Shown piece by piece: positions 31,290 through 53,748 of a DNA stretch of 64,000 nt. The position numbers and the translations under genes were made by a program. The stretch lies in IMG/VR virus record IMGVR_UViG_3300028569_002417, positions 124,001 to 188,000 of that record. One strand, given 5' to 3'. Position 1 is the first letter of the stretch, and every line of letters begins with the position of its first letter. The notes beneath the pieces are model-generated. The model worked only from the letters and a program-made list of their open reading frames with translations, was not told the origin of the DNA and did not search any database.

Positions 31290-31879
31290 GAAGACCAAAT
31301 ATTGATCTGTTTTTCAAATTTACATATTTGCTTTTTATAAAATAAATCAACTCTTTTTTTCAGTTGAGATTCCCAATCTTCTTGACATTCTGAAGTAAGA
31401 AGAAATTTCTTGTTTTTATCTTTTATTTGAAGTTGTCCATATCCAAGAGCTCCAATTGTGAGATTATTCCAGTCTAATTCACAAATATTAAAAACCTTTA
31501 CATCTAAAATTTCCACTAAATCTTTATTTCTTTTGTAATCAACAAAAATATAATTTAAGCTTTGGTTTTTGTTTTGGAAAAACTTTTTGAGTCTTTTTAC
31601 CGATATAAGGTTTGGCATCGAAAATCCAGCTTTTTCTTGGACATGATGTGTCTTGACATCGTAGAAAACATATTTTTTTTCAAATGGAATTATAAAGTCT
31701 TCTATTGATCTTTTGCTTTTGGCGGGGGAGAATCGTTCTTTGAATTGATATTCAACTATTTTAGAGCAAAGATTTTCTATCTTATCTCCTACAGCACGAT
31801 GAGAAAAAGTCTCGTCAATTGTGAAATTTTTGAGATTTTCAGCGATTATATTTTTTATTTCTAAATTCAAAATCATCAA
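31286..31879 (-). CDS. PD-(D/E)XK restriction endonuclease-like protein (HincII/EcoRV-like)
   Basis: RAVGDKIE, IEDF...YDVKT, PNLISVKRL, GQLQ. Confidence 0.55.
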   Translation of the reverse strand: MMILNLEIKNIIAENLKNFTIDETFSHRAVGDKIENLCSKIVEYQFKERFSPAKSKRSIEDFIIPFEKKYVFYDVKTHHVQEKAGFSMPNLISVKRLKKFFQNKNQSLNYIFVDYKRNKDLVEILDVKVFNICELDWNNLTIGALGYGQLQIKDKNKKFLLTSECQEDWESQLKKRVDLFYKKQICKFEKQINIWSS

Positions 31880-32883
31880 ATGATCTCTTCTTTTATCAAT
31901 TCTAAATTTGTAGATGAAATAAGTCCAGCGATAGGATATTTTCTTATGAGATTTTCAAAACCTTGAATAATTTGATCAGATTTAAGTTCTGTGATGCAAG
32001 GTTTTTGCATCTCTTTGCTTTTTGGGCAAACAATGCAAAGATAACATGGTCCGCATTCCCAATCGCCGTTATCACGATGTTTTTGCACAAGCTCAAAATC
32101 GTAATGTCTACCGTAAACCTTTCCATCAGTGAAAGAAAAAACACCAACTAGAGGTTTTTTTAACGCACCAGCAAGATGAAATGTTCCAGTATCAATTGAT
32201 ATTACATAATCTGCCGCTGCAACTAGCCCTTTCCAAGATTCAGGTTCAATTTTTATAAATTGTGGAATATTTATGCTTGTAAAAATTTCAAGAGGTTCAT
32301 TGTGAATGGTATAAACAAAAAATCCTTTATCACATAGTTTTTTGCATACTTCATATATTTGTGTGTCTGTTAAGCTTTTTGATTGTCCAAACATACATTT
32401 GGTTGATTTGGCCGCAACTAAAACCATTGGAAGCTTTTTAGTGTTTATTTCATATAATTTTTCAATATAAAATTCTTTTTCTTTGCATTCCATGAAGCAG
32501 TTATGGTTTGAAAGCTTAACACCACAATGATTGGCCCAGATATCGCTACGGTGAATGGTGTTTTTACCTCCCATTTTACTTTCATGCACACGACACACTG
32601 TCGTTATGTCATATGATGCTCCATATGTTCTTTCATTGATTTCTTCTATTGCCACTGTTTTTGCATAAGGATGATCTTTAGCAAATTCTAAATATGTTCT
32701 AGGACAGGCATATGTTAAATTAATTTCAGGCATTACCTTATGAAAATCTTCAAACATCATTCTTTGCATAATGATGTCGCCATATCCACCTGCTTTTCTC
32801 TTGATGAGGACTTTATTCCTTCTGAGAAAATGTTCTTTTATCGTGATTGGACAAATAGTTTTTTTCTTAACGTAAGGAAACAT
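31876..32883 (-). CDS. GT9 (heptosyltransferase-like) glycosyltransferase
   Basis: GGYGDIIM, ADYVISIDTGTFHLAGALKKPLVGVF. Confidence 0.85.
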   Translation of the reverse strand: MFPYVKKKTICPITIKEHFLRRNKVLIKRKAGGYGDIIMQRMMFEDFHKVMPEINLTYACPRTYLEFAKDHPYAKTVAIEEINERTYGASYDITTVCRVHESKMGGKNTIHRSDIWANHCGVKLSNHNCFMECKEKEFYIEKLYEINTKKLPMVLVAAKSTKCMFGQSKSLTDTQIYEVCKKLCDKGFFVYTIHNEPLEIFTSINIPQFIKIEPESWKGLVAAADYVISIDTGTFHLAGALKKPLVGVFSFTDGKVYGRHYDFELVQKHRDNGDWECGPCYLCIVCPKSKEMQKPCITELKSDQIIQGFENLIRKYPIAGLISSTNLELIKEEII

Positions 32884-33057
32884 ATATATCTTGTCTCTTT
32901 TTTACTACCTCAGTATTACAATTATACAAGTTCCAGCTGTCTGCATGGATGTTTGATCTTTATGTAATGCTTGAAACCCTAATGCAGGAAAAGGATGCTT
33001 CAAGGCACTTTTCAAAGGTAATTCAACTAAGTTTAATTGAAAACTTGAAATTGAGAC

Positions 33058-33089
33058 AGAGAGGTTAACCTTGTTGGTTCAACCTCTCT
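33058..33089 (-). terminator. hairpin immediately after the glf stop
   Basis: AGAGAGGTT/AACCTCTCT plus AACC/GGTT; no clear U-tract. Confidence 0.45.
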
Positions 33090-34212
33090 ATACAAATGTT
33101 CTAAACTTAGTTAATGCCGAAGCAATTGTCTGGTCGATGTCCAGATATTTATATTCACCAAGCCTTCCTCCAAAAGTAATTTCTTTGTGATTTGTTTTAA
33201 GATTGGCATATCTGTTGTATAAGTCACTGTTTTTATCATCTCTGATTGGGTAGTAAGGCTCAGGATGATCTTTGAATGCAACTGGGATGTCATAGGAAAC
33301 AACAGTTTCTTCTTTTGAATGTGGTTTTACTTCATAGTGTTTTGGAGCATTTTTGTAAAAATGCTTGTGTTCTATTGTTCTTATGTGTGGCACAGACATA
33401 TCTGTGTGGTTAAAAACAGCATTTCCTTGATAGTCACCATATATTGTTTTGTGTTCAAATCTTAAAGTGTTGTATTCCAAAGATCCAAACTCATAGTCGT
33501 AAAATTTATCTATCGGTCCTGTGTAAACCAGATGTTTGGCATAATCACGCCATTTGTTTCTAATTGTGAAAAAATCAGTGTTGAGTTCTGTTTTAATTCC
33601 ATCAAGCATATTTTTTATTGTTGCTGAGTATCCTTCATTTGGAATGCCTTGATATTTTGTTGTAAAATAATTTTCTTCATAAGTGAGTCTGATTGGCAGT
33701 CTCTGAATTATTGAGGATGGAAGATCTCTAGGTTCTTTCATCCATTGTTTTTTAGTGTATCCATAAAAGAATAATTCATAGATTTCCTTGCCAACTCTGT
33801 CTAAAGCCCATTCTTCAAAGTTTCTAGGATTTTCGCATGGTATTCGCACATCTTGTAGTTTGCGGTATGCTTCTTCTGGAGTGACAACTCCCCATAGTTG
33901 ATGAAGAGTCATCATGTTAATTGGAAATGAATAAACATTTCCTTGAGACAAAACTTTTGGTTTATTGATGAAAGGGTTGATTTTCGTGAATTTATTGATG
34001 AAATCCCATACTTCTTCGCTTTGAGTGTGGAATATGTGTGCTCCATATTCGCTTACAATGATGCCATTGTCCCATTTTCGGTCATATGTCGCACCAGCAA
34101 TGTGATTATTTTTATCAATTACAAGGCACTTTTTACCAGCATCTGCTGCTTTTCTTGCAAAGGTAGCGCCAAAGAATCCTGATCCCACAATCATGAAGTC
34201 AAATTCAGGCAT
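33088..34212 (-). CDS. glf: UDP-galactopyranose mutase
   Basis: IVGSGFFGA, HIAG, YGAHIFHT, YFTTKYQGIP, EPYYP, GRLGEYKYLD. Confidence 0.95.
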   Translation of the reverse strand: MPEFDFMIVGSGFFGATFARKAADAGKKCLVIDKNNHIAGATYDRKWDNGIIVSEYGAHIFHTQSEEVWDFINKFTKINPFINKPKVLSQGNVYSFPINMMTLHQLWGVVTPEEAYRKLQDVRIPCENPRNFEEWALDRVGKEIYELFFYGYTKKQWMKEPRDLPSSIIQRLPIRLTYEENYFTTKYQGIPNEGYSATIKNMLDGIKTELNTDFFTIRNKWRDYAKHLVYTGPIDKFYDYEFGSLEYNTLRFEHKTIYGDYQGNAVFNHTDMSVPHIRTIEHKHFYKNAPKHYEVKPHSKEETVVSYDIPVAFKDHPEPYYPIRDDKNSDLYNRYANLKTNHKEITFGGRLGEYKYLDIDQTIASALTKFRTFV

Positions 34213-35038
34213 TTTTACTCCCAGCTAGATGATCACTCAAACATCCTGCTAAGTATGCGTCACAGTATTCTTTTTGTGAACTCCAACCGTATTTGTAATA
34301 ATTCCTATTTCCAAGAAATCCAGTAACCCAAAAATCGATGTTATTTTCCATCCTATAGCCCCATGCTGTAAATGTTGGTATTTTTGCAGCAGGACCCCAT
34401 ATAGCACTCCAACTGTCACAAGCAAGAACAATATCAGCACGATAAATTGTAAAGGCTAATGCTTCTAATATCGACCAAGATCCAATTTTATTGATTGTTT
34501 TTTTAATGCTCTCTTTCTTCATTGTTCTTTCTATTGGATCATTTGGACCACCAACCATGTAAATGCTATAACCCTTTTCGTGCAATAAGTTTATACATCT
34601 GTCCCATATTGGTATATACCAATCTATAAATTGTTGTGGTTTTAGATCGATGCTTACTGGTTGAAGAACTGCTATTTTTTCAGTTTTTTCAGTTAAAGGA
34701 ATGTATTTTTTAAGGTCAACCCATGATTTCATGTCATTGTTTTCACGCAAAATCATTGGTTGAAGTATAGAGCAGTTGTGTTTTTTACTAAAATAGAAAG
34801 ATTCTCTGATGTCATAGTCAATGTCGTATTCTACGGATTTTATAAAATTACAAGATTTTATGATTTCTACGACATTTGGACATGATTGCTTTATCTTCCC
34901 GTGAGATTTGAAAATAGGAGATGTGTGAACAATAGCCGCATCATGTCCTAAAGCTTGCATTGCTATGTTTGCACGGCAAATATTTAGGCCAGTATCGCCT
35001 ATTGCTCCGGTTTCAAAATAAATATGTAAGTCTGACAT
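34205..35038 (-). CDS. GT9-like glycosyltransferase
   Basis: GAIGD, IYMVGG, ADIVLACDSWSA. Confidence 0.65.
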   Translation of the reverse strand: MSDLHIYFETGAIGDTGLNICRANIAMQALGHDAAIVHTSPIFKSHGKIKQSCPNVVEIIKSCNFIKSVEYDIDYDIRESFYFSKKHNCSILQPMILRENNDMKSWVDLKKYIPLTEKTEKIAVLQPVSIDLKPQQFIDWYIPIWDRCINLLHEKGYSIYMVGGPNDPIERTMKKESIKKTINKIGSWSILEALAFTIYRADIVLACDSWSAIWGPAAKIPTFTAWGYRMENNIDFWVTGFLGNRNYYKYGWSSQKEYCDAYLAGCLSDHLAGSKNA

Positions 35039-35052
35039 TACTCTTATTCAGT

Positions 35053-35685
35053 GTGAATATAAAAAATTATAATCTTATTGATTTGAAATGCAAGATTGAT
35101 TCTGATTTGCAAAAGCAAACCATAAGTGGTAGAGTTTTGCTTGATCGATTTTGCATGATTGATGAAACATCAAGAAAATCACCTTCATATACAGATCCAA
35201 ATTACGCTGGATTTTACTACCATTTTGGCAAATACATAGAACCAAATTCAATATTTGAATTCGGATTCGACCTTGGACTTTTTCCAGCAAGTTTCATGAT
35301 TTCATGTAAAACAGTTCAAAGATTTCTTGGTTTTAGAGAAAAAGATGGAGATTTTTTCTCTGAAAGAATAGGAGCGAGAAATATAAAAAAATCATTCAAA
35401 GGAAAATCTGATTATTACCATGGGACAATTTATGACAAAAAATTTGATAAATTTTTGATGAATTCTTGGGATATGATTATATTTGCCACTGAATATAAAT
35501 ATGATAAACAACTTGAATATCTTGATTTTATATGGCCTCATGTAAGTGATTACGGTATAATTGTTTGCGACAACTTAAACAGGCATTCTCCAACAAAAGA
35601 AGCTTTTAATGCATTCGCACAGAGTAAGAACAGGGAGCCTATTCTCTTTTCAACTCGTCACGGAACAGGATTGCTGCAAAAATAA
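35053..35685 (+). CDS. class I methyltransferase-fold protein
   Basis: IFEFGFDLG, WDMIIF, YGIIVCDN; start uncertain (GTG 35053). Confidence 0.6.
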   Translation: MNIKNYNLIDLKCKIDSDLQKQTISGRVLLDRFCMIDETSRKSPSYTDPNYAGFYYHFGKYIEPNSIFEFGFDLGLFPASFMISCKTVQRFLGFREKDGDFFSERIGARNIKKSFKGKSDYYHGTIYDKKFDKFLMNSWDMIIFATEYKYDKQLEYLDFIWPHVSDYGIIVCDNLNRHSPTKEAFNAFAQSKNREPILFSTRHGTGLLQK

Positions 35686-35728
35686 ATAAAAGGCAAGACT
35701 AATTTAAGTTGATGAACAGGAGGCTGTT

Positions 35729-36496
35729 GTGGGATTTGAATGTTGCTATTATTATCACGAAAAAGTAGATGGTGAATATAACAAAGAGGAGACAAAAACT
35801 TTCAAGAAGAAAGTTGGAGATCCTTTTGATGATGTTCCTCTTGAAAAAATAGCCGCATCAATCATGGCTCAGATGGCAAGAAGAGACATTTGGATCATTG
35901 ATGTTGAGATATTTGAGTTGAGTAAAAAACAAGTTAGTTTCAAAGAATCAAAGGGCGGAATTATAATCAAGAACAAGAAATTTTCCTTTGATGGTGGGGA
36001 AGATGTTTTTGTTGCCGTTGAAGAATTACCTCAGATATGTCAAGCCACTCCTTCCACGAACTCTCAATACACTGTTACGGAATTTCAGCAGACCAATTCT
36101 GTCAGTATGCCAGCACAACAGCTTTCTGCCGCTGCTCATCCCCACAATGTAAGTAAAACAGCTACTCGCAGGGTAGTTGATCAGATGGTTTTTTTGCCTG
36201 AACCTTTACATCTTCATCAAGCTAGACAGAAAAACATGAAGTTTACTGTTAATAAAAAGTATTTAATTTTTGAAAAGAGACTTGCTGCAAATGGAGTTGG
36301 TCAGGTTTTTGTAACACAAGATGATACAGGAAGAGATCAGATTGTGTCTGACATTTATTTTGTGCCAGCAAGTATAAATTTGGTTGCTGATAAAGAATTG
36401 AATTTTAGTGAAACCCCTGAAGAAAAAGATGGCGGTAATCTTTACTGGGGTAAAGCATCTAGTGAACCGGGAATGCCTGATCTTAGAAGGAGATGA
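35729..36496 (+). CDS. hypothetical protein
   Basis: 255 aa; SD AGGAGG before GTG. Confidence 0.8.
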   Translation: MGFECCYYYHEKVDGEYNKEETKTFKKKVGDPFDDVPLEKIAASIMAQMARRDIWIIDVEIFELSKKQVSFKESKGGIIIKNKKFSFDGGEDVFVAVEELPQICQATPSTNSQYTVTEFQQTNSVSMPAQQLSAAAHPHNVSKTATRRVVDQMVFLPEPLHLHQARQKNMKFTVNKKYLIFEKRLAANGVGQVFVTQDDTGRDQIVSDIYFVPASINLVADKELNFSETPEEKDGGNLYWGKASSEPGMPDLRRR

Positions 36497-36963: not shown

Positions 36964-37020
36964 AAATAAAATATTTTTGTATTTGGGCTAAAGTTTTTTG
37001 TAGTTTCATGTGATAATAAT

Positions 37021-37048
37021 ACGGCGATGCCAACAAAGACATCGTCGT
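37021..37048 (+). promoter_or_regulatory. hairpin in the SSB leader
   Basis: ACGGCGATG/CATCGTCGT stem with a 10-nt loop, about 25 nt before the ATG. Confidence 0.5.
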
Positions 37049-37072
37049 ATTACTTTTTACTATGAGGCCACT

Positions 37073-38071
37073 ATGTCACTTGACTTTGAACCACTTGATC
37101 TGTCTGAGATTAACAAAGAGGCTAAAAGAGTCTCTGAAGAAGGCGCAGCCGCTGGAAACAGTGGTGATTATCTTGATAAATTCGTCAAGATGCCTGACCG
37201 TGATGGGTTTGTAATCATGCGTGTTCTTCCCCGCAAAAAGGGTGGAAGCGTATGGTGTGCAACTCGTGTACACACTCTCACTAATCCTGATACACGCAGC
37301 AAAAAGACCTACCATTGCCCACGCAAGTTGGTTGAAACCGACAAGGGTGAAAGATGGATGGGCGATTGCATTATTTGCAAGTATTACAGTGATTTGTGGC
37401 AGAAGTCTGAAAGTCTTTCTGGTAAAGCCCAAGAGGATCTTCAGAATCAAGCCAGAGCAATCAAGCCTGTAGAACGATATTACTACAATGTAATTGTTCG
37501 TTCTGAAAAGGACAAAGAAGGCAACATTAAAAAGAATGTCGGACCCAAGATATTCTCTTGCGGTAAGACAACCCACGCCAAGATCATGCTTGCCATGCGT
37601 GGAGACGAAGCAGCTGGTGAAAAGCCACTTGGAGACATCACTCATCCAAAGGATGGACGTGACTTCAGAGTCGTTAAGAAAGTTATCAAGGGTGGTGGAG
37701 GGATGGAATATCCCAACTACGATAACAGCAAGTTTGAAGAACCAACACCTGCTGGAAACCTTGATGAATTGAAATCATGGATGGAAAGCATTCATGATCT
37801 TCAGGCTCTTCGTGTGATCAAGACTTCAGATGAATTGAAGCAAGCACTTCGTGTTCATCTTGGCATGGTCAAAGAAGGACCAGCTGCCAATGATACAGAA
37901 CTCGATGAATTCAGGAAAGCAGGATCTGCTACTCCTTCCAAACCTAAAGCAGTTGAGACAATTCGTGAAGAATTAGTCGTCAGCAGCACTCCTCCTGTTG
38001 CTAAAGAAGAGTCAAAACCAAGCGATGATCTCGCCGATGACGACTTCCTGAAAGAACTTTCAGGCATGTAA
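37073..38071 (+). CDS. gp32-like single-stranded DNA-binding protein
   Basis: MRVLP, H...CP...C.IC Zn site, RYYYNV, GPKIFSCG, GRDF, YPNYDNSKF, acidic C-tail DDLADDDFLKEL; ATG 37073 after SD GAGG. Confidence 0.85.
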   Translation: MSLDFEPLDLSEINKEAKRVSEEGAAAGNSGDYLDKFVKMPDRDGFVIMRVLPRKKGGSVWCATRVHTLTNPDTRSKKTYHCPRKLVETDKGERWMGDCIICKYYSDLWQKSESLSGKAQEDLQNQARAIKPVERYYYNVIVRSEKDKEGNIKKNVGPKIFSCGKTTHAKIMLAMRGDEAAGEKPLGDITHPKDGRDFRVVKKVIKGGGGMEYPNYDNSKFEEPTPAGNLDELKSWMESIHDLQALRVIKTSDELKQALRVHLGMVKEGPAANDTELDEFRKAGSATPSKPKAVETIREELVVSSTPPVAKEESKPSDDLADDDFLKELSGM

Positions 38072-39372: not shown

Positions 39373-39404
39373 GTTTGAGGGGCATGAAAAAATGCCCCTC
39401 AAAC
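39373..39404. terminator. hairpin/terminator between convergent genes
   Basis: 13-bp stem GTTTGAGGGGCAT/ATGCCCCTCAAAC. Confidence 0.75.
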
Positions 39405-40430
39405 CTCTATCATGCTATATTCTTCATGTGTGAATTTGTCTTTTTGAAAAACAATAAGATTGTTGTGTACTTCATGTATGATTACGATCTTATTGTTTCT
39501 CACACACCAAAGACCAATTGTACGAATAAACTCTTCATCTTTTGAATTATCATCAAAAACTTTGATTCTATGATCGTCGCAAAATTCAACCAATTCTTTG
39601 TTTTCGTTGCTTCCAAATAAGAAAGTTTTATTTTTTAGTTCTTCGCATGGACTATCATTGTAAATTTCCATCCAGTCCATGAATTGTGGATTTTTATCTC
39701 TTCCAACCCAGTGAATGTGATTGAGATGACCACTGAAAATGCTATGATGACAAATGCTAGACTCATGTGTCAGGAATGGCACTTTAGTACCATAAATTTT
39801 ACACATGCGAAGACCATATGAAAGACCATGATCTCCATATCCTTCTGCAAATTCTTTTCTTATGTTAAAGTATTTCTTTGCATCGGTATTTTCAACGAGT
39901 CTGTTGATTGCAGCAAGGCTTGTTATCCCTACTTCTTGCTCATGTGCTGGAGCTTCCATGAACTCCGTTGATTTGCTTGTTCTGTACCACCATCCATATC
40001 CCATTTTTGTCAATATTCTTTGATCAGTGGCAAAGATGTCATATAAGAATCTTGATCCTAAATGGTATTCACGATTGTGATCGAAGTCTCTTTCAAGATT
40101 AGCCATCAATCCGCCAAGATCAGTGATGCTGTCCTCGTCCATTCTGATGTACCATTTGGCAAAATCCTTTTGTATATGCTTGCTGTAATAGTTGTAAATT
40201 CTTTGTGCTGTAAATGAATAAGGACATATTATGACATCAACATCAATATTTGATGGCCAATCATTTTTTAGAAAATCAGCACTTTCACCGCAATTTTTTG
40301 TGCCAAGAAATGATATGTGAATCCGCAAATCCTTAGTGTTCAAAAGACCATATTTTTTGAAGTCTTCTAATCTCATCTTGATTTGCGGACGTGTTGTGTC
40401 TGATGGTACTGCTATTTCAAAATCATACAT
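39399..40430 (-). CDS. possible GT-A glycosyltransferase (Fringe/GT31-like)
   Basis: WYIRMDEDS motif, GYGD, HIHW. Confidence 0.5.
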   Translation of the reverse strand: MYDFEIAVPSDTTRPQIKMRLEDFKKYGLLNTKDLRIHISFLGTKNCGESADFLKNDWPSNIDVDVIICPYSFTAQRIYNYYSKHIQKDFAKWYIRMDEDSITDLGGLMANLERDFDHNREYHLGSRFLYDIFATDQRILTKMGYGWWYRTSKSTEFMEAPAHEQEVGITSLAAINRLVENTDAKKYFNIRKEFAEGYGDHGLSYGLRMCKIYGTKVPFLTHESSICHHSIFSGHLNHIHWVGRDKNPQFMDWMEIYNDSPCEELKNKTFLFGSNENKELVEFCDDHRIKVFDDNSKDEEFIRTIGLWCVRNNKIVIIHEVHNNLIVFQKDKFTHEEYSMIEV

Positions 40431-47144: not shown

Positions 47145-47152
47145 GGTCTAGA

Positions 47153-47174: not shown

Positions 47175-47183
47175 TAAGGATTT

Positions 47184-47828
47184 ATGAAGGTAATTGCAGC
47201 ACTCTCGCAAATGGCTCATGGAAAAGATGTTTTCTGTGATTATCTTTGCGAATGTCTTAATGATATTTCTTCTAAAAAAGAATGGACAAGAAGCGCATTT
47301 GCGAATGCAGTTAAAGATACTTTCTGCAACGCTTTTAATGTAGATCGTAATTTTATTGAGAATTGGAAAAGAAATTCTGAGGCTCCTGATGGATTTCTCA
47401 TGCCTATTCGTCAGTGTCTTCAGTTTATTGGAGATGGATATCGCAAAATCCGTGAAAATATTTGGATTGAAATTGCACTTAAAGATAATGGCAAAAACAT
47501 TATCATAAGCGATGGAAGATATTTCAATGAAGCAGAAGCAGTCAGAGAAAAGAATGGATTGATGTTTTTAATTTACAGACCCGGATTTATCAATGATGAT
47601 CCTAATCCAAGTGAATCACAAGTAAAACCATTGCTTCAATGGGCTTCTGGAAATTTGAAAGAAGGTCCTGTTGATTATTCAAGCAACATAATGAGATATG
47701 GAATAACTGTCCCACATGAATTGAGATATTTTGATTATTTCATCAAGAATGATGGAAGCATTGAGGATTTGCACAAGAAGATAAGGGAAGATGTTGTTCC
47801 TTTTGTGCTGAAAAAAATTAAAGGATGA
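47184..47828 (+). CDS. deoxynucleoside monophosphate kinase (T4 gp1/T5 dnk-like)
   Basis: GKDVF, RQCLQFIGD..R...NIWI, IISDGRYFNE, IYRPG...PSE. Confidence 0.8.
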   Translation: MKVIAALSQMAHGKDVFCDYLCECLNDISSKKEWTRSAFANAVKDTFCNAFNVDRNFIENWKRNSEAPDGFLMPIRQCLQFIGDGYRKIRENIWIEIALKDNGKNIIISDGRYFNEAEAVREKNGLMFLIYRPGFINDDPNPSESQVKPLLQWASGNLKEGPVDYSSNIMRYGITVPHELRYFDYFIKNDGSIEDLHKKIREDVVPFVLKKIKG

Positions 47829-48313
47829 TTATTTTTGAAGAAAAAGATGATAGGTTTTATATTGCAGAATCCAAGATAAAGGGTGCTGGTAGGGGAGTTT
47901 TTGCTTCTAGGAATATTAAAAAAGACGAATTTATTTTTATAAGTGGAGTATTAGTTGAAATAGGAAGCGAGTCTGATTCGACTACTTGTTTTATGAATAA
48001 CTATAAATTTGCTGCTGATCCAAAGTGGAATGGAAATTCTGTTGATATAGGCAAGTATGTGATATGTCCTTTGGGTTATGCTGCTTTGGTTAATCATAGT
48101 AATAGTCGTGAGGAGCAGAATGTTGAGATTAGGTATTTGGGTGAGAATTCTAAAAAGAATCATCATGGCAAGGCTGTTTATTGGTTCTTGAGGGATGTTG
48201 AAAAGGACGAGGAGATACTTGGAAACTATGGACCTATATGGTCAGGTTTCAAGAAGAAGATAAGATGTTATCGTCCTTTTTTCAGGATTGTGGGCAAGAA
48301 TGGTTCCTTGTGA
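47825..48313 (+). CDS. SET domain protein
   Basis: SKIKGAGRGVFASRNI, LVNHS, RDVEKDEEILGNYG. Confidence 0.85.
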   Translation: MIIFEEKDDRFYIAESKIKGAGRGVFASRNIKKDEFIFISGVLVEIGSESDSTTCFMNNYKFAADPKWNGNSVDIGKYVICPLGYAALVNHSNSREEQNVEIRYLGENSKKNHHGKAVYWFLRDVEKDEEILGNYGPIWSGFKKKIRCYRPFFRIVGKNGSL

Positions 48314-48442
48314 ACTTTTGAACAGTTTCGTAGCCATTTTTGCCTTCGATTATTGTTCCCATTTCGGGATGTGCTCCTTGAAGCCAGCGTATTCCGCTTT
48401 CTCGAATTGAGCATTTGTATGTGACTATTTCGTCGAGGATTT

Positions 48443-49114
48443 TTATCGATGAAGATTTTTGATTCTTTGTTTCAGTTTGCCCATACCCACTTCCGTCAAA
48501 ACCATAAATCCTAATCCTCTCTGCTGGCAATACTGGTTGCATGCTGTCCATTTCGCATTATTCCTTGGCAATGTTGTTTGGTTTGCCGGTTTGATTTCCC
48601 AAATTTCAATTCTTCCGTCATCGAACATAACTTTTAGATCAGGGTTATATTCATGAATATTCCCTTCAAATGTATATTGGACTTTAAGTGGTTCCACTTC
48701 ATATCCAATAACTTCTGGCATTGCTTCCAAGCATTCGTAGACATCGCATTCCATCCCTGATCGATAATGCATTTCCTTGCCGCCGTTCTTGTTGGACATC
48801 ATGTATCCTTCTCTGAACTTCGGCTTGCGTTGTTTAAGTTTACCAGTTTTTGCGGACTGGTCTTTCCATATAATAGCCTTCATCTGTCCGTTTTTCGGTA
48901 TATTTTTTTCATGCGGGTGTTTCGCTCTGTAATGAGTTCGTACACAACGAACGGGACAACCACAACGAGCAAGAGGACATAAAATGTATTCTCTGCCTTC
49001 TTCATGAGATTCAATGATATGTGTTTTATAGTCTTCAAAATTTTCATGAACAACTCCACACACAAAGCATGTGTATTTTCTTAGGCCATTATCTTTCGGG
49101 AATGGTAGCGTCAT
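48443..49114 (-). CDS. TnsA/gp4-like endonuclease with two N-terminal C2H2 zinc fingers
   Basis: CFVC...H...H; CPLARC...H...H; YRSGME, YNPDL, WEIKP; start ATG 49114 (ATGA overlap). Confidence 0.75.
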   Translation of the reverse strand: MTLPFPKDNGLRKYTCFVCGVVHENFEDYKTHIIESHEEGREYILCPLARCGCPVRCVRTHYRAKHPHEKNIPKNGQMKAIIWKDQSAKTGKLKQRKPKFREGYMMSNKNGGKEMHYRSGMECDVYECLEAMPEVIGYEVEPLKVQYTFEGNIHEYNPDLKVMFDDGRIEIWEIKPANQTTLPRNNAKWTACNQYCQQRGLGFMVLTEVGMGKLKQRIKNLHR

Positions 49115-49779
49115 AATAATTTCTTTCTTCCTTCTTTCCATCTTTCAAAATCATGTGGATAATCGAAGTCTTCAGTCCAATCGTCGATATGTGCTACATT
49201 TGGATGATATTTTACTTCTTCTATATCAGTGCATCCTGCCAAGTCAATGATTTCTTTATTTGTGAGCTTGGCCATGAGGTGATAATTCGACAGTCTCATG
49301 ATCTTTTTTTCAATAATTTCATCGATATAATTTGATATTATTTTATTCATATCTTTTTTGAAAGACAGGGCGAATGTTTCTTTATATTCGCATCCTGTGA
49401 AGCTTGATGGTGACAATCTGGCAACCCATCTCCAATCTAGTTCGTGATTAAAAATAAGATCAATTGCATTATCGGTGTAGTAGGCATCACCAGCCATGAG
49501 AACAGTTTCGCTGTCATTTGACCAAAGGAATTCTGAAGATTTGAAAATTGAACAATCTTCCCAATTTGGGTCTTGATGTGGTATTAGTAAATTGCATCCT
49601 TCAATTTTATATTTTTCATCAGATCCTACGATGTGAATGTCGTTGGTGTATTTTTTAACTTGTCGAACAATTCTTTCGATTAAAATTTCGCCTTCTATTT
49701 CAATGAAATGTTTTTTAACACAGAGATAATTATCCCATCTCTTTCCGTCTCCTCCAGCTTGTATTATGATTCTTTTCAT
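49111..49779 (-). CDS. NTP transferase (sugar/choline-phosphate nucleotidyltransferase-like)
   Basis: IIQAGGDGKRW, KHFIEIEGE.LIER, GDAYYT. Confidence 0.8.
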   Translation of the reverse strand: MKRIIIQAGGDGKRWDNYLCVKKHFIEIEGEILIERIVRQVKKYTNDIHIVGSDEKYKIEGCNLLIPHQDPNWEDCSIFKSSEFLWSNDSETVLMAGDAYYTDNAIDLIFNHELDWRWVARLSPSSFTGCEYKETFALSFKKDMNKIISNYIDEIIEKKIMRLSNYHLMAKLTNKEIIDLAGCTDIEEVKYHPNVAHIDDWTEDFDYPHDFERWKEGRKKLL

Positions 49780-50168: not shown

Positions 50169-50211
50169 TTTTTTTATTCCTCATATGGTCTTTCAATACA
50201 TATATAGAATT

Positions 50212-50667: not shown

Positions 50668-50668
50668 T

Positions 50669-50842: not shown

Positions 50843-50855
50843 TGAAAGGTAAATC

Positions 50856-51275
50856 ATGAATTACACAATGCGCTACACACAATATTTATCTGGCATCTTG
50901 TCAGAAGCTGATTTTCATGAAATGAGCCCTGATCAAATGTCCAATGCGGCTGCACCAATGGCTCCTCAAATGGGTGGTCCTTCTCCAGTTGTTGATGATC
51001 AGGGTCTTGGTGATGATCAGGGTCTTGGTGATGATCAGGGTCTTGGTGATGCACAAGGTGGTTCAGAACCAATTGCGGGGCTTTCTAATACTACTAAAGG
51101 TCTTTTGGATAGATTGATTGCTCAGTTGTCAGCAGCTAAGAATTTACAACCAGTTGCTTCTCAAGAAATTCTTAATCGATTTATGAAAGCGTTGCCAAAT
51201 CTTAAACGTGATAAATCACTTGCAACAGTTCAAAATCGTTTCAAACCACTCAAACCATTCAAACCACTACAGTAA
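50856..51275 (+). CDS. low-complexity hypothetical protein, possible prohead core/internal protein
   Basis: YLSGILSE; acidic (DDQGLG)3 linker. Confidence 0.7.
   Translation: MNYTMRYTQYLSGILSEADFHEMSPDQMSNAAAPMAPQMGGPSPVVDDQGLGDDQGLGDDQGLGDAQGGSEPIAGLSNTTKGLLDRLIAQLSAAKNLQPVASQEILNRFMKALPNLKRDKSLATVQNRFKPLKPFKPLQ
50994..51047 (+). repeat. in-frame 18-bp tandem repeat x3 (GATGATCAGGGTCTTGGT)
   Basis: Read directly. Confidence 0.95.
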
Positions 51276-51294
51276 TCATTTAGAGATTACCGTC

Positions 51295-51323
51295 TTTACA
51301 GTTGAAATCAATTAGTTTATAAT
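51295..51323 (+). promoter_or_regulatory. sigma70-type promoter for thyX-hldE
   Basis: TTTACA, 17 nt, TATAAT. Confidence 0.65.
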
Positions 51324-51354
51324 TTGACAGGATCACATTTCAAGAGGTTCTGTC

Positions 51355-52263
51355 ATGTCTGACATTATGGATTCTGTTGTCAATAAGACAATTAATTGCC
51401 TTGATAAAGGGCATGTGACTCTAGTCGATGTAATGCCAAGGAATGTTCCTGAAGGTAAAACTGCTGATTATGCCATTGTTCAGGCTGCGAGAGTAAGCTA
51501 TGGAGATGGAACTAAAACTGTCAATGAAGACCGTGGACTTATTCGTTACCTTCTCAGGCACCAACATACCACTCCATTAGAAATGGTAACCCTGAAATTT
51601 CATTGCAAGATGCCTATCTTTGTTTGCCGTCAATGGGCAAGGCACCGTATGAGTTCAACAAATGAAATTTCAGGTCGTTATTCGGTTATGAAAGACGAAT
51701 TTTATTTTCCTCAGGCCACTGATCTAAGATCCCAGTCTCAAATAAATAAACAAGGTGGAGAAGGCACTGTTGAGGAAATAACAGCTAACTATTCAGCAGG
51801 TAAAATTGCCGATAATTGCAATTCAGCTTATGATTTTTATGAATATATGATTCATGCAGGTGTTTCAAGAGAACAGGCAAGAATGGTTCTCCCTCTCAAC
51901 TTATACACAGAATTTTATTGGAAAATTGATCTTCACAATCTTTTTCACTTTTTGGCGCTAAGAGCAGATAGCCATGCCCAAAAGGAAATCAGAGTTTATG
52001 CAGAAGCAATTATTGAGATTTTACGCCAAATTGTTCCAGTAGCACTTGAAGCATGGGAAGATTATCATCCTATGCGTGGAGCAATAAAACTCACAAGACT
52101 CGAAACAGAAGCACTAAAAAGCTACATCCAGAAATTTCAATCTTTTGCTCATGCCGAATTCCAACATGTTGTCAGCGACAACAAGCGTGAACAGTCTGAA
52201 TGGATTGAGAAAGCCAAGATTCTTGGAATCAATGTTCCTCCGATAAAACAGAATGAGGCTTAG
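51355..52263 (+). CDS. thyX: flavin-dependent thymidylate synthase
   Basis: AARVSY, HTTPLE, RQWARHR...NEISGRY, EQARMVLP, LRADSHAQKEIR. Confidence 0.95.
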   Translation: MSDIMDSVVNKTINCLDKGHVTLVDVMPRNVPEGKTADYAIVQAARVSYGDGTKTVNEDRGLIRYLLRHQHTTPLEMVTLKFHCKMPIFVCRQWARHRMSSTNEISGRYSVMKDEFYFPQATDLRSQSQINKQGGEGTVEEITANYSAGKIADNCNSAYDFYEYMIHAGVSREQARMVLPLNLYTEFYWKIDLHNLFHFLALRADSHAQKEIRVYAEAIIEILRQIVPVALEAWEDYHPMRGAIKLTRLETEALKSYIQKFQSFAHAEFQHVVSDNKREQSEWIEKAKILGINVPPIKQNEA

Positions 52264-52356
52264 GATCAACTAATTGAAAGCCATGACTGGCTATGATTTG
52301 TAATGTTAGAACAATCATTGTGATCATGGCTTTCTCCCTTGTGGACATTATAACAG

Positions 52357-53748
52357 ATGAAAAGCATTTTGCAATTTCTCGAAAGTGATAAAAAAGGCCA
52401 AACTCTTAATATTGGAGTAATTGGCGATGCAATGATTGATGAATACTATGATGTTAAAATTAAAAGAATAAGTCCTGAATGCCCAATTCCCATCATGCAT
52501 AGCAAAGAACATGAACCAAAAATTCTTCCCGGCGGAGCCGCAAATGTCGTTCATCAATTCAAGAATTTTAATGCTAAAGTCAATCTTGGTTGCTTGTTAG
52601 ATTATAAAGCGAAAAGTATATTTGAAGATGCAAGAATCAATACTGATTATTCAGTAAATATTGCTCATGATATTTCTAGAAAGAGAAGATATTACAGCGA
52701 ACATATTCAGGTTGCAAGAATTGATATAGAAAAAAATAATTATGGTTTTAATGATGATGATTTGTTCTTAAAAACCGAATCTTTGTTTGATAAATTTGTT
52801 TTGAATGATTTTCAGGCTGTTATATTTTCAGATTATGGCAAAGGAATATTTAATTTTTTCAAAAATGAATATCTTAAAAAATTCCCAATCACAGTTGTTG
52901 ATCCAAAAAATGGTGATTTGACTCGTTGGCGTGGATGTACTGTTCTGAAACCAAATCAAGAAGAAGCATTGAAATTAAGTGGTAAAGATAATGTTCGTGA
53001 TGCTGGTCTTTATTTATCAGAATTATTGGAATGTTCTGTTGTCATTACTCAGGCAGCACAAGGAATTAGTGTTTTTGAAAAAGGTGGAATAACTGAGATA
53101 AGACCAACAGTAAGTCCTGCTGTTGCCGAATCTGTAATTGGCGCTGGAGATGCCTTTATAACATTCTTGACAATGGCAATGTGTAGGGGATTTTCTCTTC
53201 AAGAATCTGCTGATATTGCATTTAAGGCTGGAACATTATACGTTTTGAATAAGCATAACAAACCTTTAGATAGATTTTCCATTATTCACTCTATTGATTC
53301 AATTGGTGCAAAGGTTATACCTTATGATGAAACTAATATGTTTTGCAATAGAGATTATAAATTGGTTTTTACTAATGGCTGTTTTGATATCATGCATATG
53401 GGGCATATTGATTGCTTGAAATTTGCCAAATTACAAGGCGACAAACTTATGGTTGGATTGAATTCAGACGAGAGTGTCTCAAGATTAAAGCCCGGAAGAC
53501 CGATCATGTCGGTTAAGGATCGTGCCTCTGTTCTTGCAGCATGTGAATATGTTGATTATATTGTTGTTTTTGATGATGACACACCATTAGAACTTATCAA
53601 AAAGATCAGTCCTGATGTTTTAGTAAAGGGTGCAGATTATAAGGAAGAAGATGTTGTTGGTTATGGAATTGTCCCAGAAATAAAAAGATGTCCTCTTGTG
53701 GAAGGCATCAGCACAACAAACATTATTGAAAAAATTAAAAAACTTTAG
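52357..53748 (+). CDS. hldE: bifunctional heptose-7-phosphate kinase / heptose-1-phosphate adenylyltransferase
   Basis: GDAMIDEY, GGAANV, SDYGKG, PNQEE, GAGD; FTNGCFDIMHMGH, GLNSDESV, KGADY, STTNII. Confidence 0.9.
   Translation: MKSILQFLESDKKGQTLNIGVIGDAMIDEYYDVKIKRISPECPIPIMHSKEHEPKILPGGAANVVHQFKNFNAKVNLGCLLDYKAKSIFEDARINTDYSVNIAHDISRKRRYYSEHIQVARIDIEKNNYGFNDDDLFLKTESLFDKFVLNDFQAVIFSDYGKGIFNFFKNEYLKKFPITVVDPKNGDLTRWRGCTVLKPNQEEALKLSGKDNVRDAGLYLSELLECSVVITQAAQGISVFEKGGITEIRPTVSPAVAESVIGAGDAFITFLTMAMCRGFSLQESADIAFKAGTLYVLNKHNKPLDRFSIIHSIDSIGAKVIPYDETNMFCNRDYKLVFTNGCFDIMHMGHIDCLKFAKLQGDKLMVGLNSDESVSRLKPGRPIMSVKDRASVLAACEYVDYIVVFDDDTPLELIKKISPDVLVKGADYKEEDVVGYGIVPEIKRCPLVEGISTTNIIEKIKKL

What the first reader, a model, noticed from the sequence alone, without database searches (positions are those of the whole stretch)
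31876..53748. Dispersed ADP-heptose and galactofuranose supply with matching transferases
hldE (52357), glf (33088), an NTP transferase (49111) and three GT9-like proteins (9075, 31876, 34205) mean the phage encodes both donor-synthesis steps and transferases. Established: heptose is also put on proteins by Aah/TibC-type enzymes. Inference: fibre heptosylation on the Ser/Thr-containing GSQ/GTQ triplets, or LPS core editing for superinfection exclusion.
Basis: partly seen in the sequence, partly recalled or inferred. Interest (0 to 1): 0.6.

Follow-up and report, generated by a model that had tools for sequence, protein, structure and literature searches.

The report
Huge-phage heptose/galactofuranose glycosylation toolkit
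A roughly 430-kb uncultured freshwater phage carries enzymes that make the sugar donors ADP-heptose and UDP-galactofuranose, plus matching sugar transferases, one set in a conserved three-gene operon; what they put the sugars on is still unknown.

Summary
52357-53748 encodes a two-domain HldE with intact kinase and adenylyltransferase motifs. 33088-34212 is a bona fide UDP-galactopyranose mutase. 31876-32883 is a GT9 heptosyltransferase by HMM, fold and catalytic residues. 9075-10475 is a TPR-fused GT9, shown through two paralogs. 34205-35038 has a GT9 fold by structure only. 49111-49779 is only a weak MobA-like NTP transferase.

New findings:
- An HldD-like epimerase lies about 80 kb upstream. 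GmhA and GmhB are absent, so the phage tops up a host pathway.
- The order 34205-gene, glf, GT9 is a conserved operon in relatives, between gp32 and dCMP deaminase.
- The GT9 belongs to a family of more than 525 proteins, typical of a huge-phage clade, with four invariant cysteines recalling the TibC iron finger.
- The window holds at least 11 glycosyltransferase genes.

The acceptor is unresolved. My best guess is cytoplasmic glycosylation of phage proteins (0.4). Host LPS editing (0.3) and DNA glycosylation (0.1) remain rivals. DNA glycosylation lacks any hydroxypyrimidine-forming enzyme. This is a new variant of virus-encoded glycosylation, of moderate interest.

The parts
52357..53748 (+). 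HldE-like bifunctional heptose-7-phosphate kinase / heptose-1-phosphate adenylyltransferase (463 aa)
   Evidence: PF00294 plus PF01467. The best NCBIfam hit is HldE NF008454, at 275 bits, below the cut-off of 521. It aligns to HldA 4E84 and HldC 5X9Q with the GAGD and HxGH motifs. About 100 columns are invariant across 5 phage homologs at 42-48% identity.
33088..34212 (-). Glf, UDP-galactopyranose mutase (374 aa)
   Evidence: TIGR00031 scores 319.4, above the cut-off of 303.75; PF03275 3e-65. It always lies directly downstream of the 34205-family gene in relatives. Two short contigs from a lake metatranscriptome, 100% identical, lie at 33675-33967 (a weak hint only).
34205..35038 (-). GT9-fold glycosyltransferase with no sequence-family assignment (277 aa). 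Inferred to be the galactofuranosyltransferase.
   Evidence: No Pfam, NCBIfam or PHROG hit. The AF2 model has pLDDT 94. VIA Z is 13.4-15.3 to eight GT9 entries, against 10.9 or less for others. Atlas TM is 0.70 to GT9 clusters. hhalign to the GT9 family is weak (probability 16%, E 1.6e-3, in register over the C-lobe). It overlaps the glf start by 8 nt, and it co-occurs with glf in 23 of 23 relatives.
31876..32883 (-). Stand-alone GT9 heptosyltransferase with an invariant four-cysteine knuckle (335 aa)
   Evidence: PF01075 scores 30.4 against 22. VIA Z is 20.6-23.9 to GT9 structures. D36, K169, D231 and H236 align with WaaC D13, the phosphate-binding Lys, D261 and H266. C277, C280, C286 and C296 are invariant or nearly so in 109 homologs. 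The family has more than 525 members, on contigs of up to 602 kb.
49111..49779 (-). MobA-like NTP transferase (222 aa). Its link to the sugar pathway is unproven.
   Evidence: PF12804 scores 23.7, below the gathering score of 27. phrog_33187, function unknown. The Atlas look-alikes are viral clusters in which 50-72% of members carry PF12804.
9075..10475 (-). TPR-fused GT9-like transferase (466 aa), one of three paralogs in the genome
   Evidence: It is a paralog of G000 98479-99909(-) and 47358-48923(+), both of which pass PF01075 and carry N-terminal TPRs. The Atlas look-alikes are TPR+GT9 clusters.
6924..8287 (-). Two tandem GT25 glycosyltransferases (228 and 226 aa)
   Evidence: PF01755 scores 39.3 and 52.7 bits, against a gathering score of 24.
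8287..9078 (-). Sulfotransferase (263 aa)
   Evidence: PF13469 2.9e-17 and PF00685 1.1e-12; phrog_27463.
10837..11520 (-). GT2 glycosyltransferase (227 aa)
   Evidence: PF00535 scores 28.1 against 23.3.
1292..6289 (+). Plus-strand half of the glyco island: GT4 (1292-2350), methyltransferases (2347-3051, 3009-3707), GT4 (3711-4718) and a triple methyltransferase (4667-6289)
   Evidence: PF00534/PF13439 and Methyltransf_11/23/25/31.
39399..40430 (-). Fringe-like putative glycosyltransferase (343 aa)
   Evidence: PF02434 scores 20.9, just below the gathering score of 21. It is conserved about 5 kb from the triad in relatives at 35-52% identity.
14348..20539 (-). Two collagen-like proteins (1248 and 806 aa). 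They are candidate acceptors for the neighbouring island only.
   Evidence: PF01391 3.5e-103 and 2.5e-90. Gln fills the Y position in 68-78% of G-X-Y triplets; Ser/Thr are at X in about 11%. They are absent from the three near-complete relatives.

Best explanation
This is a virus-encoded, cytoplasmic glycosylation system that partly supplies its own sugar donors.

Steps shown by sequence or structure:
- HldE phosphorylates host-made D-glycero-D-manno-heptose 7-phosphate and adenylylates heptose 1-phosphate.
- An HldD-like epimerase elsewhere in the genome can convert ADP-D,D-heptose to ADP-L,D-heptose.
- The first step (GmhA) and the phosphatase step (GmhB) are not phage-encoded, so the phage boosts the flux of a host pathway.
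- Glf converts host UDP-galactopyranose to UDP-galactofuranose.
- The conserved operon (GT9-fold protein, Glf, GT9) couples this supply to two soluble GT-B transferases.

Inferred steps:
- The Cys4 GT9 transfers heptose from ADP-heptose.
- The 277-aa GT9-fold protein, which has lost the His of the D-T-G-x-x-H donor motif and never occurs without Glf, transfers galactofuranose.
- Together they build a heptose/Galf glycan on one conserved acceptor.
- The acceptor is most likely one or more phage proteins, probably virion surface proteins. They would be O-glycosylated in the cytoplasm before assembly, in the manner of TibC/AAH (the BAHT family) and FlmG.
- The three TPR-fused GT9 paralogs would use their TPR domains to hold protein substrates.
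- The 11-kb island at 639-11520 (GT4, GT25, GT2, TPR-GT9, methyltransferases, sulfotransferase) would elaborate further glycans.

I hold the toolkit itself (donor supply plus transferases) at about 0.85. The stated confidence of 0.4 is for the whole statement, including the protein acceptor.
For: Donor supply:
- HldE has both domains with catalytic motifs, conserved in five relatives.
- The HldD-like gene scores 202.5 bits on TIGR02197, against 94 for GalE.
- Glf is above the equivalog cut-off.

Transferases:
- GT9 membership of the 31876 gene rests on HMM, fold and the catalytic, phosphate-binding and heptose-binding residues.
- The 34205 gene has a GT9 fold.
- Operon conservation: glf follows in 23 of 23 relatives and the GT9 in 13 of 17.

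Protein acceptor:
- Three of the four GT9 genes are fused to N-terminal TPR repeats. This is the architecture in which FlmG's TPR domain binds its flagellin substrates (PMC7591256).
- The stand-alone GT9 has an invariant C-x2-C-x5-C-x9-C knuckle, inserted in the C-lobe just before the C-terminal helix. This is like the four-Cys iron finger of the protein heptosyltransferase TibC, at C339/342/358/370 (PMC4358343).
- TibC is among the best structural matches and has the highest identity, 18-19%.
- No enzyme has a transmembrane segment.
- No other LPS-core gene (WaaA) occurs in 18 records.
- In relatives the GT9 adjoins variable islands of sugar-tailoring genes such as PhyH, DegT, WbqC and methyltransferases.
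- The window alone holds at least 11 glycosyltransferase genes, several methyltransferases and a sulfotransferase. From my own knowledge, this load resembles the autonomous glycosylation machinery of giant viruses.
Against: - No acceptor protein has been identified.
- WaaF and 3TOV score as well as TibC, with Z values tied within 2. Sequence profiles reach WaaC and WaaF but not TibC.
- The protein lacks TibC's N-terminal beta-barrel (335 aa; model).
- The Cys spacing differs from TibC, and residue-level equivalence was not shown.
- The N-terminal half carries a net charge of +10. This would suit an anionic acceptor such as Kdo2-lipid A or nucleic acid.
- The operon lies among replication and nucleotide-metabolism genes (gp32, UvsX, dCMP deaminase, DnaB, PolA), not among structural genes.
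- Collagen-like fibres cannot be the clade-wide acceptor.
- The genome held is only about 52% complete.
Confidence: 0.4

Rival explanations
1. Host envelope remodelling. The GT9 enzymes act, like WaaC, WaaF and WaaQ, on the host's Kdo2-lipid A or LPS core at the inner face of the cytoplasmic membrane. HldE and HldD sustain ADP-heptose during infection, and Glf with its partner transferase adds Galf. The changed LPS would block superinfection, or stop progeny from adsorbing to debris, or simply keep the envelope intact during a long latent period.
For: - All biochemically characterised GT9 members other than the BAHT enzymes are LPS heptosyltransferases (my own knowledge).
- WaaF and 3TOV are the top structural matches, and WaaC and WaaF are the only PDB hits by sequence.
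- The N-lobe is basic, at +10.
- Dependence on host GmhA and GmhB implies a heptose-making, probably Gram-negative host.
- Heptosyltransferase I and HldE have been annotated as LPS auxiliary genes in huge phages and cyanophages (PMC10747093; S-T4 and others).
- GT25 is an LPS-associated family.
Against: - A host that makes ADP-heptose already has its own core heptosyltransferases, so the phage copies would be redundant.
- There is no WaaA in 18 related records, and no Kdo-pathway gene except a CMP-sugar synthase in one record.
- TPR fusion and a Cys4 knuckle are not features of LPS heptosyltransferases (my own knowledge).
- The GT9 family is conserved across a clade from both lakes and the ocean, while its neighbouring tailoring genes vary.
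- No flippase, ligase or membrane component was seen in the window.
Confidence: 0.3
2. DNA sugar hypermodification. The GT-B enzymes transfer heptose and galactofuranose to a hydroxylated pyrimidine in phage DNA, protecting the genome from host nucleases. HldE and Glf would supply the donors.
For: - There is a direct precedent for heptose. A phage gene cluster with a kinase/phosphatase, a cytidylyltransferase and a GT-B enzyme makes mono- and di-heptosyl-5hmC (bioRxiv 10.1101/2023.12.21.572611).
- There is a precedent for Glf. A phage-encoded UDP-galactopyranose mutase is assigned to the glycosylated 5-hydroxycytosine pathway of Rhizobium phage RL38J1 (PMC13326640).
- Here the operon sits between gp32/UvsX and dCMP deaminase/DnaB/PolA. 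hldE adjoins thyX, and a dNMP-kinase-like gene lies nearby.
- The N-lobe is basic and carries a Cys4 knuckle.
Against: - No ThyA-type hydroxymethylase or 5-hydroxy-dCMP synthase, and no TET/JBP dioxygenase, occurs in the 225 kb held.
- Across 17 relatives only two have a ThyA. The one examined, in G001, keeps D169 and N177, so it is an ordinary dTMP synthase.
- Two relatives that are at least 98% complete have the GT9 but no ThyA. No record has a TET/JBP hit above the cut-off.
- The known DNA GT-B enzymes resemble T4 beta-GT or GT4, not GT9.
- TPR fusions fit protein substrates better.
Confidence: 0.1
3. There is no common pathway. The genes are independently acquired auxiliary metabolic genes with unrelated roles (nucleotide-sugar pool maintenance, capsule or exopolysaccharide changes, small-molecule glycosylation), and the apparent matching is coincidental.
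For: - hldE, the HldD-like gene, the NTP transferase and the TPR-GT9 paralogs are tens of kilobases apart, among unrelated genes.
- HldE and the HldD-like gene are patchy among relatives: 5 of 17 and 6 of 17.
- Cellular HldE homologs are at most 38% identical and scattered over many phyla, so they give no host signal.
Against: - The GT9-fold gene, glf and the GT9 form a tightly conserved operon.
- Four GT9-fold or GT9-family genes occur together with two of the ADP-heptose enzymes in one genome.
- HldE is kept with intact motifs over 42-48% divergence.
Confidence: 0.12

Closest known systems
LPS core heptosyltransferases WaaC / WaaF (CAZy GT9; PDB 2H1H, 1PSW)
   Same: Same GT-B/GT9 fold (Z 20.6-23.1). 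The N-terminal G-D catalytic Asp, the phosphate-binding Lys and the D-T-G-x-x-H ADP-heptose motif are conserved. Size is similar, at about 330 aa.
   Different: Only 14-18% identity. The phage family has an invariant four-Cys knuckle and a conserved basic N-terminal tail, which WaaC and WaaF lack. It is encoded by a lytic-type huge phage with no other LPS-core genes. The acceptor is unknown.
Bacterial autotransporter heptosyltransferases TibC / AAH (BAHT family; PDB 4RAP, 4RB4)
   Same: GT9-type catalytic core that uses ADP-heptose on Ser residues of proteins in the cytoplasm. A four-cysteine metal finger is inserted in the C-lobe near the C-terminus (PMC4358343). TibC ranks among the best structural matches, at Z 22 with 18-19% identity.
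   Different: There is no N-terminal beta-barrel and no evident beta-hairpin thumb. The Cys spacing is C-x2-C-x5-C-x9-C, against C-x2-C-x15-C-x11-C in TibC. There is no autotransporter substrate. The oligomeric state and the bound metal are unknown. TibC is not reached by sequence profile.
FlmG (Caulobacter flagellin O-glycosyltransferase) and OGT-type TPR-glycosyltransferases
   Same: An N-terminal TPR domain plus a C-terminal GT-B domain, soluble and cytoplasmic. In FlmG the TPR domain binds the protein substrate (PMC7591256). The three TPR-GT9 paralogs share this layout.
   Different: The catalytic domain here is GT9-like, which predicts ADP-heptose as donor rather than a nonulosonic acid or UDP-GlcNAc. 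The substrates are unknown, and no homology to FlmG was tested.
HldE/RfaE-like auxiliary genes of cyanomyoviruses (for example Synechococcus phage S-T4, S-SSM7, P-TIM68)
   Same: Phage-borne heptose kinase and/or adenylyltransferase genes, annotated as LPS-related auxiliary genes.
   Different: Identity is at most 29% over the full length. Most cyanophage copies are the adenylyltransferase domain alone. None is reported together with a Glf/GT9 operon.
Phage DNA sugar-hypermodification gene clusters (heptosyl-5hmC; arabinosyl- or galactosyl-5-hydroxycytosine)
   Same: Phage-encoded sugar kinase/nucleotidyltransferase plus GT-B transferases, Glf in one lineage, and a position among nucleotide-metabolism genes.
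   Different: There is no hydroxypyrimidine-forming enzyme (no ThyA homolog with D169N or N177D, no TET/JBP) here or in the near-complete relatives. The transferases here are GT9-fold, not beta-GT-like.

Membership tests
GT9 (Glyco_transf_9) - gene 31876-32883 | Pfam PF01075 match above the gathering score | tested here: met
   30.4 bits against 22, although only over profile positions 178-215. In the genome scan it scores 31 bits, over the cut-off.
GT9 (Glyco_transf_9) - gene 31876-32883 | GT-B fold closest to solved GT9 structures | tested here: met
   VIA Z is 20.6-23.9 (rmsd 3.0-3.4, 249-277 residues aligned) to 3TOV, 1PSW, 4RAP/4RB4 and 2H1H. The next non-GT9 fold scores 12.4. Foldseek E-values are 6e-12 to 7e-9.
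GT9 (Glyco_transf_9) - gene 31876-32883 | Catalytic Asp in the N-terminal G-D motif, the phosphate-binding Lys, and the D-T-G-x-x-H donor motif | tested here: met
   GGYGD36 aligns with WaaC SSMGD13, K169 with WaaF's FGPAK, and D231-T-G-T-F-H236 with WaaC D261...H266. These positions are invariant or nearly so in 109 homologs.
GT9 (Glyco_transf_9) - gene 31876-32883 | Uses ADP-heptose as donor | not testable with these tools
   Inferred from the conserved donor-binding residues only.
BAHT (TibC/AAH protein heptosyltransferases) | Four-cysteine iron finger inserted in the C-lobe | tested here: inconclusive
   C277, C280, C286 and C296 are invariant or nearly so. They lie in a coil between the last C-lobe strand and the C-terminal helix. 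The spacing differs from TibC C339/342/358/370. Residue-level superposition and the bound metal were not determined.
BAHT (TibC/AAH protein heptosyltransferases) | N-terminal beta-barrel domain (TibC residues 1-97) | tested here: not met
   The protein is 335 aa. The model starts the Rossmann-like N-lobe at residue 24, and only a short helix precedes it.
BAHT (TibC/AAH protein heptosyltransferases) | Dodecameric ring and a cognate autotransporter substrate | not tested
   No oligomer prediction was run. No autotransporter is expected in a phage.
HldE (bifunctional heptose kinase / adenylyltransferase) | PfkB-type kinase domain fused to a cytidylyltransferase-like domain, with HldE as the best family | tested here: met
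   PF00294 at residues 22-298 and PF01467 at 338-458. NF008454 spans 18-462.
HldE (bifunctional heptose kinase / adenylyltransferase) | Score above the NCBIfam equivalog cut-off | tested here: not met
   275.3 against 521. The domain models score 165 against 181.5 and 157.5 against 345. It is a divergent phage lineage, at most 38% identical to cellular HldE.
HldE (bifunctional heptose kinase / adenylyltransferase) | Catalytic and substrate motifs (ISPExP, GGAANV, GAGD; FTNGCFD-H-GH, ISTT) | tested here: met
   Alignments to 4E84 and 5X9Q. The motifs are invariant in five phage homologs.
Complete ADP-L,D-heptose pathway (GmhA, HldE, GmhB, HldD) | All steps encoded | tested here: not met
   GmhA (TIGR00441, PF13580) and GmhB (TIGR00213) are absent from the 225 kb held. 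GmhA is absent from 17 relatives, including three that are at least 98% complete. The HldD-like gene is present at G000 43891-44814, with TIGR02197 at 202.5 bits, below the cut-off of 274.6.
UDP-galactopyranose mutase (Glf) | Equivalog-level match with an FAD-binding N-terminus | tested here: met
   TIGR00031 scores 319.4 against 303.75; PF13450 plus PF03275.
GT9 - gene 34205-35038 | Sequence-family match and the D-T-G-x-x-H donor motif | tested here: not met
   No Pfam or NCBIfam hit. The motif reads C-D208-S-W-x-x-I-W-G, without the His. hhalign to the GT9 family gives a probability of 16%.
GT9 - gene 34205-35038 | GT9-type fold | tested here: met
   Eight GT9 entries lead the list at Z 13.4-15.3, against 10.9 or less for others. 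Atlas TM is 0.70 and 0.68 to clusters in which 100% of members carry PF01075.
GT9 - gene 9075-10475 | PF01075 match | tested here: inconclusive
   No direct hit. Two paralogs (BLASTP 8e-25 and 2e-15) pass PF01075 at 27.4 and 25.3 bits. The Atlas look-alikes carry PF01075 plus TPR.
Phage DNA sugar-hypermodification cluster | An enzyme making a hydroxylated pyrimidine (ThyA homolog with altered specificity, or C5-methyltransferase plus TET/JBP) | tested here: not met
   No PF00303 or PF12851 hit in this genome. ThyA occurs in 2 of 17 relatives, and the one in G001 has canonical D169/N177. There is no TET/JBP hit above the cut-off in 18 records. This genome is only about 52% complete.

The most novel reading that the evidence does not exclude
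The Cys4 GT9 that marks this uncultured huge-phage clade is a viral protein O-heptosyltransferase. It would be a minimal, barrel-less relative of the BAHT enzymes. It would prime a glycan on a conserved virion protein, and in this sublineage the glycan would be extended with galactofuranose by the first GT9-fold galactofuranosyltransferase. Phage HldE, HldD and Glf would feed the pathway. That would make it a bacterial-virus counterpart of the autonomous glycosylation machinery of giant viruses, and the first case of protein heptosylation by a virus.
Probability: 0.22. Interest if true: 0.75.

Novelty: new variant of a known kind. Interest (0 to 1): 0.5.

Why it matters
Phage-borne heptose and LPS-like genes are usually filed as host-metabolism helpers, without any test. 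Four findings here give concrete, cloneable targets for learning what large phages glycosylate:
- a conserved operon of a GT9-fold gene, Glf and a GT9;
- a clade-wide GT9 with a metal-finger-like motif;
- three TPR-fused paralogs;
- partial ADP-heptose and UDP-Galf supply.

If the acceptor is virion protein, this would extend protein heptosylation, known only from bacterial adhesin systems, to viruses. It would also matter for phage-host recognition in lakes. If the acceptor is DNA or LPS, it would add a GT9-based route to DNA hypermodification or to superinfection exclusion. Either way, the 277-aa protein is a candidate new type of galactofuranosyltransferase.

Tried and rejected
- Megablast of 31000-36000 against GenBank phages found nothing.
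- tblastn with the GT9 finds only one record, the unannotated 595-kb LR756511 at 39% identity. No cultured relative or annotation could therefore be used.
- Host inference from HldE failed. Cellular homologs are at most 38% identical and spread over Campylobacterota, Planctomycetota, Pseudomonadota and others. Cluster members carry no taxon names.
- PDB sequence searches for the 34205 and 9075 proteins, and for the profile of the 34205 family, gave only chance-level hits to PrfA, RapI and a ribosomal protein.
- Structure ranking could not separate TibC from WaaF and 3TOV, with Z tied within about 2. The choice between a protein and an LPS acceptor is therefore not decided by fold.
- The 197-aa gene at 31286-31879 has a weak HcgF-like match (E 0.001, below the cut-off). 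I took it to be nucleotide-metabolism-related and not part of the sugar system. It is also missing from many relatives that keep the triad.
- Collagen-like fibres as the universal acceptor were rejected.
- The thymidylate synthase next to HldE (ThyX here, ThyA in G001) was considered as a possible hydroxypyrimidine synthase. This was rejected for G001, whose ThyA has canonical residues. It was not tested for ThyX.
- Expression evidence is thin. Two short contigs from one lake metatranscriptome lie inside glf, which is too little to claim transcription.
No alternative genetic code was used; the standard code gives 94% ORF coverage.

Full report
CONTEXT

The window is bases 124001-188000 of a 225.5-kb IMG/VR virus record that CheckV rates as about 52% complete, which implies a genome of roughly 430 kb. 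The standard code leaves 94% of the record in long ORFs, so no other code was considered.

The window carries T4-type replication genes:
- a gp32-like SSB at 37010-38071;
- a UvsX/RecA at 38147-39364;
- helicases;
- a DnaB-like helicase at 27379-28908;
- a DNA polymerase fragment at 25297-26631;
- dCMP deaminase at 30861-31289;
- ThyX at 51355-52263.

The only GenBank phage with related genes is the unannotated 595-kb metagenomic phage LR756511. Near-identical DNA occurs in lake and freshwater metagenomes from at least ten studies. This is an uncultured freshwater huge phage.

THE OBSERVATION

hldE (52357-53748) has a PfkB kinase domain and a cytidylyltransferase-like domain. Its best family by far is bifunctional HldE, although it scores below the equivalog cut-off at 275 against 521 bits. 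Residue-level alignments to the Burkholderia heptose kinase HldA and adenylyltransferase HldC show the ISPExP, GGAANV, GAGD and FTNGCFD..H.GH motifs. These are invariant in five homologs from related phages at 42-48% identity. I see no sign of inactivation.

glf (33088-34212) passes the UDP-galactopyranose mutase equivalog cut-off.

The NTP transferase (49111-49779) is the weakest item. It has a sub-threshold MobA-like match, and the Atlas look-alikes are viral clusters in which most members carry that domain. Its substrate and its link to sugars are unknown.

THE THREE GT9-LIKE GENES

31876-32883 passes PF01075, though only over the donor motif. A high-confidence model (pLDDT 94) matches GT9 structures at Z 20.6-23.9, while other GT-B folds stay at 12.4 or below. 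A profile of 109 homologs aligns its G-D36 with the catalytic D13 of WaaC, K169 with the phosphate-binding Lys, and D231/H236 with D261/H266.

9075-10475 has no direct hit. It is clearly paralogous to two ORFs elsewhere in the genome that do pass PF01075. All three have N-terminal TPR repeats.

34205-35038 has no sequence-family match at all. Its model (pLDDT 94) is nearest to GT9 structures, with Z 13.4-15.3 for eight GT9 entries against 10.9 or less for the rest. In the ESM Atlas it matches GT9 clusters at TM 0.70. However, this protein has lost the His of the D-T-G-x-x-H donor motif.

WHAT ELSE IS THERE

- An HldD-like epimerase lies at genome position 43891-44814. TIGR02197 scores 202.5 bits and is the best family by a wide margin, but it is below the cut-off.
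- GmhA and GmhB are absent from the 225 kb.
- GmhA is absent from all 17 related records examined, including three that are at least 98% complete.
- Only weak HAD-type hits stand in for GmhB.

Among those relatives, full-length HldE occurs in 5 and a strong HldD-like gene in 6. The phage therefore tops up a host pathway rather than running its own. This implies a host that makes heptose 7-phosphate.

THE CONSERVED OPERON

The strongest new result is conserved gene order. Among 25 distinct genes of the 34205 family in IMG/VR:
- all 23 with enough flank have glf within 800 nt downstream, and usually within 33 nt;
- in 13 of 17 the Cys4 GT9 follows within 1.5 kb.

This order always sits between gp32 and dCMP deaminase, in relatives down to 43% identity. 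In one lineage the pair is separated from the GT9 by about 13 kb. The 34205 family has not been seen without glf beside it. This is the basis for inferring that it is the transferase that uses UDP-Galf.

THE GT9 FAMILY

The GT9 is much more widespread than the pair. It has more than 525 homologs on contigs of up to 602 kb and 160 IMG/VR loci. It lies next to the dCMP deaminase-DnaB-NUDIX-PolA block. On its other side is a variable set of sugar-tailoring genes such as PhyH, DegT, WbqC, an ATP-grasp enzyme and methyltransferases.

The family has four invariant or near-invariant cysteines (C277, C280, C286, C296) in a coil just before the C-terminal helix. The protein heptosyltransferase TibC has a four-Cys iron finger inserted in the same lobe, needed for assembly and substrate recognition (PMC4358343). 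From my own knowledge, LPS heptosyltransferases do not have one.

THE SIZE OF THE GLYCO REPERTOIRE

Bases 639-11520 form an 11-kb island with two GT4, three methyltransferase genes, two GT25, a sulfotransferase, the TPR-GT9 and a GT2. It lies about 3 kb from two collagen-like genes. A Fringe-like gene at 39399-40430 is conserved near the triad. An FkbM methyltransferase adjoins another TPR-GT9. None of these enzymes has a membrane segment.

WHICH ACCEPTOR?

Three candidates were weighed.

Protein. Three observations favour this reading:
- the TPR fusions, given that FlmG's TPR domain binds its flagellin substrates (PMC7591256);
- the Cys4 knuckle;
- the absence of other LPS-core genes, with no WaaA in 18 records.

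The scale and variability of the glyco repertoire also fit a protein acceptor.

Host LPS. The family's canonical role favours this reading, as do the sequence-level similarity to WaaC and WaaF rather than TibC and the basic N-lobe, at +10. But the phage copies would duplicate enzymes that a heptose-making host already has.

DNA. This deserved a serious test, for two reasons.
- Phage clusters are now known to make heptosyl-5hmC (bioRxiv 10.1101/2023.12.21.572611).
- A phage Glf has been tied to glycosylated 5-hydroxycytosine (PMC13326640).

The operon here also sits among replication genes. However, the required hydroxypyrimidine-forming enzyme is missing.
- This genome has no ThyA-type gene and no TET/JBP gene.
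- ThyA occurs in only 2 of 17 relatives, and the copy examined in G001 has canonical D169/N177.
- There is no TET/JBP hit above the cut-off in 18 records.
- Two near-complete relatives keep the GT9 without any ThyA.

I therefore rank the acceptors as protein 0.4, LPS or envelope 0.3, DNA 0.1, and no common pathway about 0.12, with the remainder unassigned.

THE FIBRE HYPOTHESIS

The collagen-like proteins are real. They have 274 and 196 G-X-Y triplets, with Gln at the Y position in 68-78% of triplets. GSQ occurs 16 and 10 times, and Ser/Thr occupy the X position in about 11%.

But collagen-like genes occur only in the closest sublineage (G009, G010, G014 and the near-identical G017). They are absent from all three near-complete relatives that keep the Cys4 GT9. 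They cannot be that enzyme's conserved acceptor. They remain plausible targets for the adjacent island. From my own knowledge, the GT25 family in that island also contains collagen galactosyltransferases. A P4H-type 2OG oxygenase lies near the contig end. Both points are leads, not findings.

COMPARISON AND NOVELTY

HldE-like genes and GT9 genes have been annotated in cyanophages and huge phages as LPS auxiliary genes, so their presence alone is not new. What I could not find described is:
- the conserved operon of a GT9-fold gene, Glf and a GT9;
- the clade-wide Cys4 GT9 family;
- the triple TPR-GT9 expansion;
- the combination with phage HldE and HldD.

I file this as a new variant of virus-encoded glycosylation. 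It is a member of GT9 and not of the BAHT family, because the beta-barrel is absent. The acceptor is unresolved.

LIMITS

The genome is half complete. There is no isolate. Metatranscriptome evidence amounts to two short contigs within glf.

Noticed in passing
window 14348-18094(-) and 18119-20539(-): Two very large collagen-like proteins (1248 and 806 aa). Their G-X-Y triplets have Gln at Y in 68-78% of cases (GNQ, GLQ, GYQ, GFQ, GHQ, GSQ). This composition is unusual: proline-poor and glutamine-rich. The region has a strong negative GC and AT skew.
   Followed up: partly
window 639-11520: An 11-kb glycan-synthesis island on both strands: a weak Anp1-like gene, GT4, two methyltransferases, GT4, a triple-methyltransferase protein, GT25 x2, a sulfotransferase, TPR-GT9, a 101-aa ORF and GT2. 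It is separated from the collagen-like genes only by a helicase, an exonuclease and one small ORF.
   Followed up: partly
G000:C1:44858-46105(-) (L006:2438-3658): A 406-aa hyper-acidic protein with repeated 'GEMRLHHGDEDEDED' units, flanked by Lys-rich ends. It lies immediately downstream of the HldD-like gene, on the opposite strand.
   Followed up: no
window 51355-53748; G001:C1:211855-213536: A thymidylate synthase gene lies next to the HldE-type gene in two distant relatives, but it is of different, non-homologous types. Here it is ThyX; in the complete 572-kb relative it is a canonical ThyA beside an ORF with only the adenylyltransferase domain.
   Followed up: partly
window 48443-49141(-): A TnsA-like / endonuclease I-like nuclease gene overlaps the 3' end of the NTP-transferase gene by 31 nt. 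It may be a homing endonuclease insertion.
   Followed up: no
window 40997-42019(+), 47825-48313(+); G000:C1:41469-42461(+): An Amidoligase_2 protein, a SET-domain protein and (outside the window) a phiEco32-like COOH-NH2 ligase. These are enzymes predicted to modify peptides or proteins, and they sit among the replication genes. The amidoligase is conserved in relatives.
   Followed up: no
G000:C1:223641-223979(+): A prolyl-4-hydroxylase-type 2OG-Fe(II) oxygenase (PF13640, 30.6 bits) lies near the end of the record. It may be relevant to hydroxylation of the collagen-like proteins.
   Followed up: no
window 31286-31879(-): A 197-aa ORF ends 4 nt inside the GT9 gene and has a weak HcgF-like (nucleotide-binding fold) match. 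It is present only in the closest relatives and is replaced or absent in others that keep the triad.
   Followed up: partly
window 33675-33967: Two short contigs (225 and 151 nt, 100% identical) from a lake-water metatranscriptome lie within glf. The same phage DNA is found in lake and freshwater metagenomes from at least ten studies.
   Followed up: partly
IMG/VR records G002-G005 and G015: Several related huge-phage records of 111-390 kb are classed as 'provirus' by IMG/VR, although they share the T4-like replication block. This is probably a misclassification caused by their many bacterial-like sugar and metabolic genes.
   Followed up: no
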